From Octopus bimaculoides (Eukaryota), in contig NC_068985.1 in NCBI RefSeq assembly GCF_001194135.2, forward strand, positions 5,257,872-5,301,358: a stretch of DNA of 43,487 bases. The letters run 5' to 3'. The notes beneath the pieces are model-generated. The model was not told the DNA's origin and searched no databases. It saw only the letters and a program-made list of their open reading frames with translations. The translations under genes were made by a program, and so were the position numbers. Within the stretch, counting starts at the first letter, position 1; the number at the start of each line of letters is the position of its first letter. Below, in pieces: positions 11,223-42,623 of the stretch.

Positions 11223-11944
11223 CAGATTTCTTATTCCAAACCTTATTCAACAAGCTTAATTTCTTCTATCTTTGTCGCAATTTCGACAAGTTTTTGACGA
11301 ATTAAATGAACGTGATAAACAATCTCTCAGGAATGTTTGGAAAAAGCTGTCATGTCAGAAATTGCGTAGATCATATCATTTCAGTCTGAGAACTAGATGA
11401 AGGGATTTCAGGAGAAACCATTTTCAGAAGTCTGCTCTGATTTCCTGTATATTCTATTACTATAAGGTGATTCGCGAAAGAAGCTTTAAGAAAACACACA
11501 CTCACACACGTGCACATGTGTATCTATGTATCTCTATGTGCGCGCTTGTGTGTAAGCTATCATAAAATATTAAATAGCAAAGCTAAATATCTAACAAGTA
11601 AAACATTATAAATATAACAAAATGCGCACAAATTGATAAGAAAAAAAGGATGTGAAAATAAAGCTAAAATATGACGAAGATCGATAACATGAAAGTTATG
11701 GTGTATCTTTAGGGTATATAACTCGAGCATTGCACGTCCAATATCAATTACTTATGCACAAGTGCAATCTTGTTAACCAAATTAGTTGGAGAAGCCATGG
11801 AAAATGCTTCTCATTTTAGTATTTCCAATAATGAATACTAGAGTAATGACAGAATAATAATTTCGAAATAGTCTAGAGCTACACAGGCAGTTCTTACTGG
11901 TGACGTAGAAGTATATGTAGTAGTATTAGTATAAGTAATATTAG

Positions 11945-13783: not shown

Positions 13784-13998
13784 AAGGCGCGCTGGCAGAG
13801 TCGTTAGCACGCTGGAAGAAATGATTAGCAGTATTTCGCTTTCTTTACGTCTTGAGTTCAAATTCTGCTGATGTCGAACTTGTCTTTCATCTTTTCGAGG
13901 TCGATTGAATAAGTACCAGTTACATACTGGGGTAGATGTAATCGACTATCCCCCTCCTACAAAATTGCTGCCCTTGTGGCAAAATTTGAAGCCATTAT
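13784..13998 (+). mobile_element. SINE family B, tail type i
   Basis: Full head, central domain and ccttgtggcaaaatttga tail. Confidence 0.9.
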
Positions 13999-14274: not shown

Positions 14275-14654
14275 ATATTCTTTTCTACTCTAGGCACAAA
14301 GCCCGAATTTTTGGGGAATGTGGGGCCAGTCGACTGGATCGACGCTAGTACGCAACTGATACTTAATTTATCGATCGCGAAAAGGATGAAAGGCAAAGTC
14401 GACCTCGGCGGAATTTGAACTCATAACGTAAAGACAGACGAAATACAGCTAAGCATTTCACCCGGCGTGCTAACGTTTCTGCCAGCTCACCACCTTATAT
14501 ATTCTTTTCTACTCTAGGGACAAGGTCCGAAATTTTGGGGGAGGGGGGGCAGTCGACTAGATCGATCCCAGTACGGAAATGGTACTTAATTTATCCACCC
14601 CGAAAGGATGAAAGGCAAAATCGACTTCGGTGTAATTTGAACTCAGAACGTAGA
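14275..14654 (-). mobile_element. Two tandem SINE B copies, tail type ii (14275-14496 full; 14499-14654 head-truncated)
   Basis: Both begin with atattcttttctactctagg (reverse-complemented tail) and share the B central domain. Confidence 0.9.
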
Positions 14655-18780: not shown

Positions 18781-19140
18781 ATTATTGATTTCAAATTTTG
18801 GCACAAGGCCAGCAATTTCGGTGGTGGGGTGATTCGATTACACCGATTCCAGAACTCAACTGGTATTTATTTTATCGGCCCTGAAAGGTTGAAAAGCAGA
18901 GCAAACCTCCGCGGAATTTGAACTCAAGACCTAAAGAAGGATGAAATGCCATCAAGCAATTTGCCCGACGTGCTAGGGGTTTCTAACGGTTCGCTGCCTT
19001 TCTTTAGCATGTTTATATTATAACTGCTCTTAAGACGGCGAGCTGACAGAATCGTTAGCACGCCAGGCAAAATACTTGGCGGAATCGACTTTCCTCCTCT
19101 CTGAAATTGCTGGCTTTGTGCCAAAAATTGAAAACAAATT
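18781..19140. mobile_element. Head-to-head SINE B pair (18781-19000 minus; 19032-19140 plus, internally deleted)
   Basis: The second copy joins its head directly to aatcgacttt..gctttgtgccaaaaattga. Confidence 0.85.
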
Positions 19141-22603: not shown

Positions 22604-22812
22604 CGTGGCAGAATCGTTAGCATGCCAAAGAAAGTGCTTAGCTGCATGTCACTCCTCTTTACGTTCTGAGTTCAAATTCCGCCGATGTCGAATTTCCCTT
22701 TTGTCCTTTCGGGGTGAATAAAATAAGTACCAGCTGAACTGTGGGGTCGATGTAATTGATTTAAACCCCTGTCCCGAACGTGCTGGGCTTATGCCAAAAT
22801 TTGAAACCAATA
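22604..22812 (+). mobile_element. SINE family B, tail type i
   Basis: Matches the B consensus. Confidence 0.85.
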
Positions 22813-22843
22813 CAGTTATGTATCATCTACCAAACATTTGAAG

Positions 22844-23019
22844 TCCTACAGTTCTATATTTAAGAGATGAGGAATTATGAACATTATTTCCATTATTTAC
22901 ATTTGACGGATATTGTTTGTTGTTAGGAATGAGAACCCTGATGAAAGCTGGAGAGCCGAAACGTTGTGTTAACAACAAACAAGATGAGGACAAGTATCCG
23001 TCAAATGTAAATAATATAA
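22844..23019 (+). mobile_element. Hammerhead-bearing hairpin insert (PLE pLTR-like)
   Basis: Perfect 21-bp (22892-22912/22995-23015) and 13-bp (22913-22925/22970-22982) inverted arms; 48-nt left tail; flanked by atttgaag (22836-22843, 23020-23027). Confidence 0.75.
22934..22970 (+). ncRNA. Minimal type-I hammerhead ribozyme motif
   Basis: CTGATGA (22938-44), AA, stem II GCT-ggag-AGC, C, GAAA (22958-61), C-GTT with no stem-III loop (palindromic ACGT); stem I AACC/G(T)GTT is bulged. Confidence 0.65.
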
Positions 23020-23452
23020 ATTTGAAGCACTCGCCAAGGGCCTGGATTCTATATCGTCAACTATATTCTACCATAAAATATCCTGGCCCCCTACATTTCA
23101 CTACCTTAACCCGTGAATTGCAACAGATGTGTTATCCTGGTGAGTTAGACTACGGGTAGCATGTCTAATTGCACAACTGCTGCAGATTTCTTACTAGGCT
23201 ACATAAGATATTCGCAAGGAAATACACAACACCGTGTAATATCAAAATGAGTGATTGAAATTTACATGAGTGGCAACAAGACTTGAACAAATATTAACAT
23301 TTGTAAAATTGCAGGTTTAGAATAAATATAAGGAAATTTCATAGGTTTCTTCTATCTATCGACTATTTGTTTTGTACAGCACAATACCAAAATATAACAA
23401 AAAAAAAAAACGAATTCGACTCGGGTTTTCGGAGATACATCCGCTACTGTTT

Positions 23453-24082
23453 AAGGCAAGCTGACAGAATCATTTGCACGCCGGGGAAAATGTTTCGTGT
23501 CATTTCGTCCGTCTTTACGTTCTGAGCTTGAATTCCGCCGAAGTAGACTTAGTCTTTCAAGCTTTCGGGATCGATAAAATAAGTACCAGTTGAGCACTGA
23601 GGTCGTTGTAATCGATTTAGTCGTTTCTCGAAATTGCTTTCCTTCTGCCAAAATTTGAACATATTATTCCTTTCTACTCTAGACAAAAGGCCCGAAATTT
23701 TGGGGAAGATCGACCCCAGTACGCAACTGGTACTTAATTTATCGACGCCGAAAGGAAGAAAAGCAAACTCGATTCGGTGGAATTTGAACCCAGGAAGTAA
23801 AGACGGACGAAATACCGCTAAGCTTTTCGCCCGGCGTGCTATCGTTTCTTATTTCTTTATTGCCCACAAGGGGCTAAACATAGAGGGGACAAACAAGGAC
23901 AGACAAACGGATTAAGTCGATTACATCGACTCCAGTGCGTAACTGGTTCTTAATTTATCGACCCCGAAAGGATGAAAGGCAAAGTCGACCTCGGCAGAAT
24001 TTGAACTAAGAACGTAACGCCAGACGAAACACCGCTAAGCATTTCGCCCGGCGTGCTAACGGTTCTGCCAGCTCGCCGCCTT
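23453..24082. mobile_element. Cluster of three SINE B copies: 23453-23663 (+, tail i), 23662-23849 (-, tail ii), 23850-24082 (-, tail iii)
   Basis: Shared head and central domain, three different 3' ends. Confidence 0.9.
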
Positions 24083-26927: not shown

Positions 26928-27120
26928 GAATCGTTAACATCCCGGACGAAATGCTGCTAAGCATTTTGTCCGTCTTTACCTTCTGAGTTCAAATTCCACC
27001 AAGATCGACTTTACCATTCGTCCAATCGTGTCGATAAAATAAGTACCGATCAAGTATAAGGATGAATGTAATCGACTTACCAACCCCACCGCATCCCCAA
27101 AAGCTGCTGGCCTTGTGTCA
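26928..27120 (+). mobile_element. SINE family B (diverged), tail type i
   Basis: Matches the B consensus. Confidence 0.8.
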
Positions 27121-42159: not shown

Positions 42160-42187
42160 CGCACACACACACACACACGCACACACA

Positions 42188-42238
<51 letters not shown>

Positions 42239-42623
42239 TATTAGCAAGCTTTCAAGGAGATATTCATCAACAGTACTTTGGAGTAAAGGTTATTTGCCCT
42301 CATAACATGGCAGTTCTGGTTTAGGACGAATGTTGCTGTAATTTAGCCCCAGGAGACATTGTCACCAGCTGGCTGAGTGTCGTATAGCCAGCTGGAGACG
42401 ATGTCCCCTGGGATTAAATTACAGCAACATTCGTCCTAAACCAGGACTGCTATGTTATGTTGGCAAATAATCTTTACTCCAACAAGCTTTCCGTTTTCGT
42501 CTACTAAAGCCACTCAGAGGGCTTTGGTCGGCCCGAGCCTATAGGAAAAGCCTCTTGCCGAAGATGCTGCGCAATGGCAATGAAACCGGAACCACTTCTT
42601 ACGACACAGTCACGCCTGTGCCT
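42160..42623 (-). mobile_element. SINE family A head half, interrupted by the hairpin element
   Basis: (CA)n and ttagcaagctttc left of the insert; cgttttcgtctact..ctttggtcggcccgag..cacagtcacgcctgtgccta right of it. Confidence 0.8.
42254..42481. mobile_element. Long-hairpin element, copy 2 (25-nt left tail, internally deleted)
   Basis: Arms 42279-42374 and 42386-42481 are homologous to copy 1; flanked by gcaagctttc (42244-53) / acaagctttc (42482-91). Confidence 0.9.

What the first reader, a model, noticed from the sequence alone, without database searches (positions are those of the whole stretch)
22836..23027. Hammerhead core in the loop of a long hairpin, with the same tail/hairpin/TSD layout as the 10.9 and 42.3 kb elements
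Seen: intact CTGATGA and GAAAC-GTT, perfect 21- and 13-bp arms, a 48-nt left-only tail and an exact 8-bp direct repeat (atttgaag). Established: PLE pLTRs encode minimal hammerheads that cleave as dimers via a palindromic stem III. Inference: this insert ties the architecture to PLE biology. Stem II starts with an A/C mismatch and stem I is bulged, so this copy may be inactive.
Basis: partly seen in the sequence, partly recalled or inferred. Interest (0 to 1): 0.7.

Follow-up and report, generated by a model that had tools for sequence, protein, structure and literature searches.

The report
Dead hammerhead retroelement copy, Penelope-style insertion
This 176-bp insert is a single, probably inactive copy of a small hammerhead-ribozyme-carrying retroelement, inserted with the tail, inverted-copy and target-duplication pattern typical of Penelope-like elements; it is a new member of a known kind, not a new kind of element.

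Summary

The motif is not chance. A spurious-ORF search led to an abundant repeat family in an unrelated eukaryote (ENA ERZ21867824, NCBI GCA_052426985.1). Its 129-bp units carry a proper minimal hammerhead: CUGAAGA, bulged A, G10.1-C11.1, 5-bp helix II, GAAAC-GUU. A covariance model built only from those units hits window 22924-23026 at 41 bits (E about 5e-7). The next best hit scores 16 bits.

Three of the four fully resolved foreign insertions show the same layout: an inverted 5'-truncated copy, a roughly 37-nt tail at one end, and 8-13-bp target duplications. The internal 3' end falls at the homologous position. So the "hairpin" is two copies of the element's 3' region joined head to head, not an RNA stem.

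The layout matches the published Penelope-like insertion signature. No Penelope gene was linked, so that step is inferred.

The window copy is a monomer with A10.1/C11.1, a 3-bp helix II and a bulged helix I, so it is probably inactive. The 10.9 and 42.3 kb elements share the layout but neither the sequence nor the hammerhead.

The parts
22836..22843 (.). Left copy of the 8-bp target-site duplication ATTTGAAG
   Evidence: Exact repeat of 23020-23027. It abuts the end of the tail as defined by collinearity with the foreign family's tail end.
22844..22891 (-). 48-nt 'tail': the extra 3'-terminal stretch, present only on the inverted copy (element sense is the minus strand)
   Evidence: It has no partner at the right end. 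It is collinear with the roughly 37-nt tail of the foreign family, but the similarity is weak (local alignment p about 0.06 against shuffles). It contains UCCUCAUCU, which is complementary to AGAUGAGGA of the body (D3, 78).
22892..22925 (-). Inverted 5'-truncated copy of the region downstream of the ribozyme: 21-nt plus 13-nt arms, lacking a 12-nt segment
   Evidence: Perfect complement of 22995-23015 and 22970-22982. The same inverted partial copy is seen in L001, L003 and L005.
22924..23019 (+). Direct copy of the element: ribozyme plus 54 nt downstream, ending at the internal 3' end
   Evidence: Covariance model R1, built from foreign units only, hits 22924-23026 at 41.2 bits, E 4.5e-7. blastn gives 81% identity over 47 nt. 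Global alignment.
22933..22937 (+). 5' strand of helix I (GAACC)
   Evidence: Pairs with 22966-22970 as C-G, (U bulge), C-G, A-U, A-U: 4 bp with one bulge.
22938..22944 (+). Hammerhead box CUGAUGA (C3-A9)
   Evidence: Aligned to CUGAAGA of the foreign consensus.
22945..22957 (+). Bulged A22945, then helix II: an A22946/C22957 mismatch at 10.1/11.1, GCU/AGC (3 bp), and loop GGAG
   Evidence: The foreign consensus has A + GGCCG...CGGCC with G10.1-C11.1. The window pair U22949-A22954 replaces C-G of the consensus.
22958..22965 (+). GAAA box, C15.2-G16.2 (ACGU palindrome, no helix III loop), U16.1, U17. Predicted cleavage is after 22965
   Evidence: Identical to GAAACGUU of the foreign consensus.
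22966..22982 (+). 3' strand of helix I (GUGUU) running into the AC-rich stretch UAACAACAAACAA (right inner arm)
   Evidence: Aligned to GUGGAAAUAACAAUAAA of the foreign units.
22983..22994 (+). 12-nt segment GATGAGGACAAG, absent from the inverted copy and flanked by the ACAAG repeat
   Evidence: The homologous GATGAAGACAAT is present in both arms of the foreign insertions, so the left arm here has a slippage-type deletion.
22995..23015 (+). Right outer arm, running to the internal 3' end at about 23019
   Evidence: The end aligns within about 2 nt of where the tail-less foreign copy ends in L005 (...AAUGAUAAAAA). The equivalent end in L001 falls within a T-run shared with its duplication and is ambiguous by a few nt.
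23020..23027 (.). Right copy of the target-site duplication ATTTGAAG
10844..11233 (.). Element with the same layout but a different family: ATTTCTTA repeat, left-only tail, 147-nt arms
   Evidence: (I12). No CTGATGA or TCATCAG inside.
42245..42491 (.). Second copy of that family: CAAGCTTTC repeat, 24-nt left-only tail, 97-nt arms, next to a (CA)38 array
   Evidence: (I13).

Best explanation
Window 22844-23019 is one insertion of a short non-autonomous retroelement. Its roughly 135-nt unit carries a minimal type-I hammerhead ribozyme, followed by a conserved 3' module where reverse transcription starts.

**Anatomy.** The insertion consists of two cDNA copies of the element's 3' region joined head to head.
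- The direct copy (22924-23019, + strand) runs from just upstream of the ribozyme to an internal 3' end.
- The inverted, 5'-truncated copy (22844-22925, minus strand) starts 48 nt further 3' (the 'tail') and stops 4 nt past the ribozyme cleavage site.
- The long hairpin is therefore a by-product of integration. The ribozyme sits in the 'loop' only because the direct copy is the longer of the two.
- The 8-bp ATTTGAAG duplication marks a staggered target cut.

**Inferred mechanism.** The element was probably mobilised by the reverse transcriptase/GIY-YIG endonuclease of a Penelope-like element. In vitro that enzyme cuts and extends both target strands and starts reverse transcription at two sites 30-40 nt apart. 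This would give exactly this tail-plus-inverted-copy pattern.

**Ribozyme state.** In the source RNA the ribozyme would act as a dimer through the ACGU palindrome. This genomic copy is a monomer with A10.1/C11.1, a 3-bp helix II and a bulged helix I, so it is most likely an inactive, dead-end copy.

**Shown:** the anatomy, homology to a hammerhead-bearing family, and the shared insertion layout.
**Inferred:** the Penelope enzyme as the mobiliser, the dimer mechanism, and inactivity.
For: 1. **Anatomy.** All features are at the stated coordinates.
2. **Route to relatives.** The + frame translation of the element matched P0002, a spurious ORF through a tandem repeat. Its locus L001 and 989 related ORFs define an abundant family in ENA ERZ21867824 and NCBI GCA_052426985.1.
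3. **Foreign consensus.** It reads ACAC-CUGAAGA-A-GGCCG-loop-CGGCC-GAAAC-GUU-GUGG, arranged as 129-bp tandem units. A diverged copy, L004 7666-7784(-), keeps the motif with helix II GGCCA/UGGCC (a compensatory change) and a GUA site.
4. **Homology to the window.** Model R1, built without the window sequence, scores 41.2 bits at 22924-23026 (E 4.5e-7); the next best hit is 16 bits.
5. **Layout in relatives.** L001, L003 and L005 each have an inverted partial copy abutting direct copies and target duplications of 8-13 bp. L001 and L005 also have a tail of about 37 nt at one end only. The tail-less end falls at the position homologous to window 23019.
6. **Literature.**
   - PLE insertions show an inverted 5'-truncated copy plus a 30-40-bp tail at one end (PMC8557442).
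   - The tail equals the stretch between two RT start sites. Both strands are cut and extended, cleavage is at ATT, and RT starts roughly 85-92 nt downstream of the hammerhead cut site (PMC11167929).
   - Metazoan PLE min-HHR features and opposite-strand pairs 100-700 bp apart are described in PMC4209133.
   - Animal retrozymes derive from PLE pLTRs (bioRxiv 10.64898/2026.07.22.740005).
7. **Youth of the insertion.** The arms are identical at 34/34 positions, so the insertion is young, and the A10.1 defect may already have been present in its source.
Against: - No Penelope RT/GIY-YIG gene was found near any copy. The RT genes in the foreign loci look like AP-endonuclease LINEs.
- The window itself was not screened exhaustively for protein domains.
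- Only one copy exists in the window, so no consensus for the source genome could be built. The unit join at TAGGA is hypothetical.
- Tail similarity between the two lineages is weak (p about 0.06).
- The tail is 48 nt here, against the published 30-40 nt.
- Covariation in the ribozyme helices is not statistically demonstrable, because the available copies are too alike: 84.9% of cells paired against 83.8% in shuffles.
- Several foreign subfamilies carry core-damaging changes (C3 to U, G1.1 to A in L004), so selection on cleavage is not obvious.
- Rfam hammerhead models do not hit the site. They also miss the foreign consensus units, so this silence is uninformative.
Confidence: 0.75

Rival explanations
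1. The copy is a severely 5'-truncated fragment of an autonomous Penelope-like element's own pLTR/3' end, not a copy of a dedicated non-autonomous (SINE- or retrozyme-like) element.
For: - PLE insertions are often heavily 5'-truncated, and min-HHRs are mostly found as isolated motifs from truncated PLEs (PMC4209133; PMC8557442).
- The AUG inside CUGAUGA opens a frame through the conserved module. This recalls PAc, whose ORF starts at the start of stem II of the ribozyme (PMC11167929).
Against: - In the foreign family the homologous unit is attached to a tRNA-like head and repeated in 129-bp tandems without any ORF.
- A search of 1.84 billion representative proteins with the window frame found no long RT protein.
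Confidence: 0.15
2. It is a chance hammerhead-like motif inside an unrelated foldback or MITE-type DNA transposon, or a random palindrome.
For: - Rfam gives no hammerhead hit.
- Helix II and helix I are imperfect.
- The 8-bp repeat alone has roughly a 1% per-position chance.
- AT-rich windows hold many inverted repeats.
Against: - The covariance model from an independent hammerhead family hits here at E about 5e-7, covering the ribozyme and the 55 nt after it.
- A motif this good is expected 0.002 times per window.
- The left end is a 48-nt unpaired tail, not a terminal inverted repeat.
- Relatives show the same asymmetric layout.
Confidence: 0.04
3. It is a LINE-mobilised SINE whose inverted arm arose by L1-type twin priming.
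For: LINE reverse transcriptases are present in the window (about 5050-8400) and in the foreign loci. Twin priming is known to give inversions.
Against: - In twin priming the inverted segment comes from a more 5' part of the RNA. Here both arms are copies of the same 3'-terminal region.
- There is no poly(A) or simple-repeat 3' end in the window copy or in the relatives.
- Two alternative 3' ends 37-48 nt apart are the PLE-specific signature (PMC11167929).
Confidence: 0.04
4. It is an active retrozyme unit, or a functional hairpin RNA (for example a small-RNA precursor) maintained by selection.
For: The hairpin is very stable (z -5 to -7.6), and weak miRNA-precursor-like hits appear (far below gathering scores). 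Retrozyme monomers are known (bioRxiv 10.64898/2026.07.22.740005).
Against: - It is a single monomer with no second ribozyme to release a unit.
- The core-adjacent pair is mismatched.
- The unit RNA is not rod-like (z -0.7 to -1.6 for the foreign unit, +0.2 to -1.1 for the window unit).
- The hairpin is explained by the insertion mechanism.
- No second copy or orthologue is available to show conservation.
Confidence: 0.02

Closest known systems
Minimal type-I hammerheads (min-HHR) of metazoan Penelope-like elements (Cervera and de la Pena 2014, PMC4209133)
   Same: CUGANGA and GAAA boxes; an extra nucleotide between A9 and 10.1; no helix III loop with a palindromic 15.2-16.2 (ACGU), implying dimer action; short helix I; occurrence as isolated motifs and as opposite-strand pairs from truncated or inverted copies.
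   Different: - Here 10.1/11.1 is A/C instead of the conserved G-C.
- Helix II is 3 bp, against the 6-8 bp typical of PLE min-HHRs.
- No flanking PLE ORF is known.
- The foreign relatives have a 5-bp helix II and proper G10.1-C11.1.
Penelope-like element insertion architecture: pLTR, inverted 5'-truncated copy, one-sided 30-40-bp tail (PMC8557442; PMC11167929)
   Same: - Inverted 5'-truncated copy abutting a direct copy.
- An extension at only one end.
- Target duplication starting with ATT.
- Two alternative 3' ends.
- Ribozyme 54 nt (without tail) or about 100 nt (with tail) upstream of the 3' end, compared with about 85-92 nt in PAc.
   Different: The whole insertion is only 176 bp with no coding part, and the tail is 48 nt. 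The link to a PLE enzyme is inferred, not shown.
Animal non-LTR retrozymes (Cervera and de la Pena 2020, PMC7229834; Li et al. 2026 preprint 10.64898/2026.07.22.740005)
   Same: Short, AT-rich, non-coding units with a type-I hammerhead. The foreign relatives form 2-4-unit tandems of 129 bp. Monomeric derivatives are known, and a PLE pLTR origin has been proposed.
   Different: The window copy is a monomer. The ribozyme is the minimal rather than the canonical type. The unit RNA is not predicted to be rod-like. No circular RNA evidence exists.
Sm-alpha SINE-like element of Schistosoma (hammerhead in a tRNA-derived short retroposon; from my own knowledge, and cited as Ferbeyre et al. 1998 in PMC4209133)
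   Same: The foreign family combines a tRNA-like head with a hammerhead-bearing body.
   Different: Sm-alpha carries a canonical hammerhead with helix III. A head was not seen in the window copy. No sequence comparison was made.
MITEs / foldback DNA transposons
   Same: Small size, long inverted repeat, flanking direct repeat.
   Different: The inverted repeat does not reach the left terminus because of the 48-nt tail. The arms are copies of an RNA 3' region, with an alternative end conserved across genomes.

Membership tests
Metazoan PLE min-HHR | Conserved boxes CUGANGA and GAAA at the right spacing | tested here: met
   22938-22944 and 22958-22961.
Metazoan PLE min-HHR | Extra (bulged) nucleotide between A9 and 10.1 | tested here: met
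   A22945. The same A is present in the foreign consensus.
Metazoan PLE min-HHR | G10.1-C11.1 base pair | tested here: not met
   The window has A22946/C22957. The pair is met in the homologous foreign consensus, with 16 of 19 scored cells G-C.
Metazoan PLE min-HHR | Helix II of at least 4 bp (typically 6-8) | tested here: not met
   Only GCU/AGC, 3 bp with loop GGAG. The foreign units have 5 bp.
Metazoan PLE min-HHR | No helix III loop; palindromic 15.2-16.2; U16.1; H17 | tested here: met
   A-C-G-U-U at 22961-22965.
Metazoan PLE min-HHR | Helix I of 4-5 bp | tested here: inconclusive
   4 bp only if U22967 is bulged. The foreign units have CAC/GUG, 3 bp.
Metazoan PLE min-HHR | Located in the pLTR of an element encoding RT plus GIY-YIG | not testable with these tools
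   No PLE ORF is at hand. The source genome could not be searched, and the RT genes in the foreign loci are LINE-like.
Metazoan PLE min-HHR | Self-cleavage, as a dimer | not testable with these tools
   Needs an in vitro transcription assay.
Penelope-type insertion | Target-site duplication | tested here: met
   ATTTGAAG twice, with about 1% chance per position. Relatives have 8-13-bp duplications.
Penelope-type insertion | One-sided 30-40-bp tail, reflecting two alternative 3' ends | tested here: met
   48 nt on the left only. The tail is about 37 nt in L001 and L005, with the tail-less end at the homologous position.
Penelope-type insertion | Inverted 5'-truncated copy adjacent to the direct copy | tested here: met
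   22844-22925 against 22966-23019. Seen in L001, L003 and L005.
Non-LTR retrozyme | Tandem array of at least 2 units, each with a type-I hammerhead | tested here: not met
   One unit only in the window. Met in the foreign relatives, at 2-4 units of 129 bp.
Non-LTR retrozyme | Expressed as highly structured circular RNA | tested here: inconclusive
   The circular fold of the (hypothetical) unit is not unusual: z -1.1, and -1.6 for the foreign unit. No expression data are available.
MITE / foldback transposon | Inverted repeats at both termini, directly inside the duplication | tested here: not met
   The left terminus is a 48-nt unpaired tail.
Rfam Hammerhead_1/3/II/HH9/HH10 | Score at or above the gathering threshold | tested here: not met
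   No hit even at E<=10 on 451 nt. The models also miss the well-formed foreign units, so they do not cover min-HHRs.

The most novel reading that the evidence does not exclude
The roughly 130-nt unit (minimal hammerhead, AC-rich stretch, and a stem AGAUGARG/CYUCRUCU enclosing the internal RT start site, followed by the tail) is a portable 3' module. It is conserved between two genomes that share no other detectable repeat. It could therefore be an ancient or horizontally spread parasite of Penelope-like reverse transcriptases, and its conserved stem and two start sites could define the RNA signal that this enzyme recognises.
Probability: 0.3. Interest if true: 0.55.

Novelty: new member of a known kind. 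Interest (0 to 1): 0.4.

Why it matters
How Penelope-like elements integrate is still poorly understood, and the role of their hammerheads is open. This 176-bp insertion shows every hallmark at once: target duplication, two alternative 3' ends, an inverted copy and the ribozyme. It also has clear relatives in an unrelated genome, with the internal 3' end at the same position. That gives a compact natural substrate for testing which RNA features direct the start of reverse transcription, and whether ribozyme cleavage matters.

For annotation, it shows that long hairpins with a one-sided tail in this genome are integration products rather than MITEs or RNA genes. It also shows that Rfam hammerhead models miss this whole class.

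Tried and rejected
- **Rfam.** The gathering search on the whole window and the E<=10 search on 22700-23150 gave no hammerhead, only sub-threshold miRNA/snoRNA noise. The same was true on well-formed foreign units, so Rfam is uninformative here.
- **More copies in the window.** blastn and model R1 found none.
- **Minus-frame translation** against 5.8 billion proteins: no candidates.
- **JGI metagenome scans.** Two patterns from the conserved module gave zero hits and then two chance hits in prokaryote-like contigs without a CUGANGA box.
- **Hypothesis: the inverted copy always ends at the ribozyme cut site, which would be evidence of in vivo cleavage.** L003 and the window fit within 2-4 nt. 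L001 turns inside helix II, L005 turns 8 nt upstream, and many foreign ORFs read through whole inverted units. Dropped.
- **My first reading of 'CTGATGT' in the L001 hairpin loop as a degenerate ribozyme.** It is the reverse complement of loop II. Dropped.
- **Rod-like retrozyme fold of the unit:** not supported.
- **Search for a Penelope ORF in the foreign loci:** only LINE-like RTs. A Pfam call on a called gene failed because of stop codons.
- **Identity of the organisms.** The accession codes are not in the paper library. The window and the foreign loci share no repeats by blastn.
- **Alternative target duplication AAATTTGAA at 22797:** rejected, because it lies inside an intact SINE.
- **P0001** from the representative search is an unrelated tandem-repeat protein.

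Full report
**Context.** The window is a draft eukaryotic scaffold. It has nine runs of N, about 35% G+C, many (TA)n and (CA)n arrays, a U6 snRNA match at 1778-1884(-), and about ten copies of a roughly 200-bp SINE. From memory, its repeats look cephalopod-like. I could not test this, and nothing below depends on it.

**Observation.**
- ATTTGAAG at 22836-22843 and 23020-23027.
- Perfect 21-bp arms (22892-22912 / 22995-23015) and perfect 13-bp arms (22913-22925 / 22970-22982).
- A 48-nt stretch (22844-22891) with no partner on the right.
- A 44-nt loop holding CUGAUGA (22938-22944) and GAAAC-GUU (22958-22965).

One further detail: 12 nt (GATGAGGACAAG, 22983-22994) occur only on the right side. 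They lie between two ACAAG repeats, so the left arm carries a slippage-type deletion. The hairpin folds far better than shuffles (z -5.1 and -7.6).

**Is the hammerhead more than chance?**
- Read with the conventions for metazoan Penelope-type minimal hammerheads (PMC4209133), the motif is: helix I GAACC/GUGUU (4 bp with U22967 bulged), CUGAUGA, bulged A22945, an A22946/C22957 mismatch, helix II GCU/AGC with loop GGAG, GAAA, and then ACGU with no helix III loop. Cleavage is predicted after U22965.
- It is the only CTGATGA...GAAA pair in the window that obeys the cleavage-site rules.
- A motif this good is expected about 0.002 times per window in random sequence of the same composition. The descriptor was set post hoc.
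- Rfam gives nothing. It also gives nothing on well-formed relatives, so that silence carries no weight.

**Relatives.**
- No second copy exists in the window.
- Translating the element in its open + frame and searching 1.84 billion representative proteins returned P0002 (E 5e-4). P0002 is a spurious ORF running through a tandem repeat.
- Its locus L001 lies on a 352-kb contig of ENA assembly ERZ21867824. It holds 2.8 units of 129 bp.
- A second search with P0002 found 989 such ORFs. All but two of the 120 listed hits came from that assembly, the other two from NCBI GCA_052426985.1. I fetched L002-L006.
- Fifteen units were extracted. Their consensus is ...ACAC CUGAAGA A GGCCG GAGGACAUAU CGGCC GAAAC GUU GUGG AAAUAACAAUAAAGAUGAAGACAAUAGUCCG.... 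This is a minimal hammerhead with the bulged A, G10.1-C11.1, a 5-bp helix II and the ACGU palindrome.
- A diverged copy, L004 7666-7784(-), keeps all of this but has helix II GGCCA/UGGCC (one compensatory pair), a different loop, and a GUA site.
- Formal covariation statistics on the 23 aligned copies are not significant, because the copies are about 90% identical: 84.9% of cells paired against 83.8% in shuffles. Slid registers pair only 14-52%.

**Homology of the window copy.**
- Covariance model R1 was built from the foreign units alone. It scores 41.2 bits at window 22924-23026(+), E 4.5e-7 (calibration is rough). The next best window hit scores 16 bits.
- The match covers the ribozyme and the 55 nt after it: GAAACGUUGUG..AA.AACAA..AAGAUGA.GACAA...UCCG...AAU.AUA.AA.
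- Relative to the consensus, the window has G10.1 changed to A, an 8-nt shorter loop II, and U-A where the consensus has C10.4-G11.4.
- The two genomes share no other repeat detectable by blastn, so this module is the only visible link between them.

**What the hairpin is.** Three of the four fully resolved foreign insertions have an inverted partial copy of the region downstream of the ribozyme abutting the direct copies (L001, L003, L005). L004 is a plain direct insertion.
- In L001 and L005, the inverted copy ends at ...AAUGAUAAAAA, while the direct array runs about 37 nt further, to ...UUUAGACAACUAA.
- The window's right end (about 23019) aligns within about 2 nt of that shorter end. The window's left tail is collinear with the foreign tail, though the similarity is only weak (p about 0.06).
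- Flanking duplications are TTACATTTTTTTT in L001 and TATATAAAGAA in L005. L003 possibly has ATATCCAG with a 33-nt filler.
- The window hairpin is therefore two copies of the element's 3' region joined head to head. The ribozyme lies in the 'loop' because the direct copy is the longer one. The two copies meet at a shared TA (22924-22925).

**Mechanism.** This layout is the published signature of Penelope-like element integration.
- An inverted 5'-truncated copy and a 30-40-bp tail at one end are described in PMC8557442, section 6.
- The enzyme cuts and extends both target strands, cleaves at ATT, and starts reverse transcription at two internal sites whose spacing is the tail. Those sites lie about 85-92 nt downstream of the hammerhead cut site (PMC11167929).
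- In the window, the cut site lies 54 nt from the tail-less end and about 100 nt from the tail end, and the duplication begins with ATT.
- L1-type twin priming does not fit. It inverts a more 5' segment of the RNA rather than duplicating the 3' end, and there is no poly(A).
- I therefore infer, but have not shown, mobilisation by a Penelope-like RT/GIY-YIG enzyme. The RT genes in the foreign loci are LINE-like, and the source genome could not be searched.

**Nature of the family.**
- In the foreign genome the unit is attached to a tRNA-like head and repeated one to four times. This resembles SINE-like hammerhead elements and the animal non-LTR retrozymes, which a 2026 preprint derives from PLE pLTRs (10.64898/2026.07.22.740005; PMC7229834).
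- The unit RNA is not predicted to be rod-like.
- Several foreign subfamilies carry core-damaging changes. Selection for cleavage is therefore not obvious.

**State of the window copy.**
- It is a monomer, so no second ribozyme is available to build the dimeric helix III.
- The conserved G10.1-C11.1 pair is broken, helix II is 3 bp, and helix I needs a bulge.
- In a genomic transcript the 34-bp hairpin and a GUUGU/ACAAC mini-hairpin compete for the cleavage site.
- The arms are identical at 34 of 34 positions, so the insertion is young. The A10.1 defect may have been present in its source.

**The 10.9 and 42.3 kb elements.** They are two copies of one family, about 90% identical to each other. 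Both have a left-only tail sharing GAGATATTCA..AACA.TACT, long arms (147 and 97 nt), and flanking repeats ATTTCTTA and CAAGCTTTC.
- The layout is the same as at 22.8 kb.
- There is no sequence similarity to the hammerhead element, and no CTGATGA/TCATCAG inside.
- The link between the three elements is therefore the integration mechanism, not common descent.

**Verdict.** It is a new member of a known kind: a minimal-hammerhead, Penelope-style short retroelement. The useful extras are the cross-genome conservation of the 3' module and its internal 3' end, and a conserved stem between the post-ribozyme region and the tail.

Noticed in passing
window 22982-22990 with the reverse complement of 22865-22873; L001-L006 units: In element sense, AGAUGAGGA just after the ribozyme is perfectly complementary (9 bp) to UCCUCAUCU in the tail. 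The foreign units pair AGAUGAAG with CUUCGUCU at a fixed offset (7-8 of 9). One pair changes A-U to G-C and one U.G to U-A between the lineages. The stem encloses the internal RT start site.
   Followed up: partly
window 22941-23019 (+ frame); P0002-P0121: The AUG inside the CUGAUGA box opens a frame, MKAGEPKRCVNNKQDEDKYPSNVNN. Its PKRC.NN..DED..P motif recurs in the foreign units. It may only mirror DNA conservation. It recalls PAc, whose ORF starts at the start of stem II of its hammerhead.
   Followed up: partly
window 10844-11233 and 42245-42491: Two copies of one abundant inverted-repeat family with a one-sided tail and no hammerhead. The 42.3 kb copy lies 8 bp downstream of a (CA)38 array (42162-42237), which fits the microsatellite insertion bias reported for some Penelope-like clades.
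   Followed up: partly
window 22606-22812 and nine other sites (9482-9688, 13793-13994, 14353-14484, 14580-14652, 18783-18962, 23462-23659, 23709-23823, 23909-24070, 26969-27047): A SINE of about 200 bp with a tRNA-like B-box (GAGTTCAAATTCCGCC). Copies are 74-88% identical in both orientations. The hammerhead element lies 24 nt past the end of one copy.
   Followed up: partly
window 1778-1884 (-): Full-length U6 snRNA match (67.4 bits, gathering score 44). It is flanked by a (TG)44 array at 1910-1997, so it may be a gene or a retroposed copy.
   Followed up: no
window about 5050-8400: LINE reverse-transcriptase C-terminal fragments in two partial copies (for example ...HPKSDIERLYIQRTEGGRGL...), interrupted by an 831-nt N gap at 5580-6410.
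   Followed up: no
L005 10200-10375 (-), L004 10289-10380, L002 1-120, L006 1-175: In the foreign genome the hammerhead units follow a shared head of about 170 nt with a tRNA-like segment (GGTTGCAGGTTCAATCCTCAC). The element is therefore a composite SINE-like retroposon with a hammerhead-bearing 3' part.
   Followed up: partly
L004 7666-7850 (-): A diverged subfamily copy with an intact minimal hammerhead (helix II GGCCA/UGGCC, GUA site). About 60 nt upstream lies an inverted copy of its helix II region, so the head-to-head arrangement recurs here.
   Followed up: partly
L004 10375-10901: Most units of this array share C3 to U (three of four) and G1.1 to A (three of four), both of which damage the ribozyme. 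The array was probably amplified or homogenised from a mutated unit.
   Followed up: no
Rfam, tested on L004 10200-11000: Rfam release 15 hammerhead models do not detect well-formed minimal hammerheads lacking helix III, even at E<=10 on 800 nt. Scans that rely on Rfam will miss this class.
   Followed up: yes
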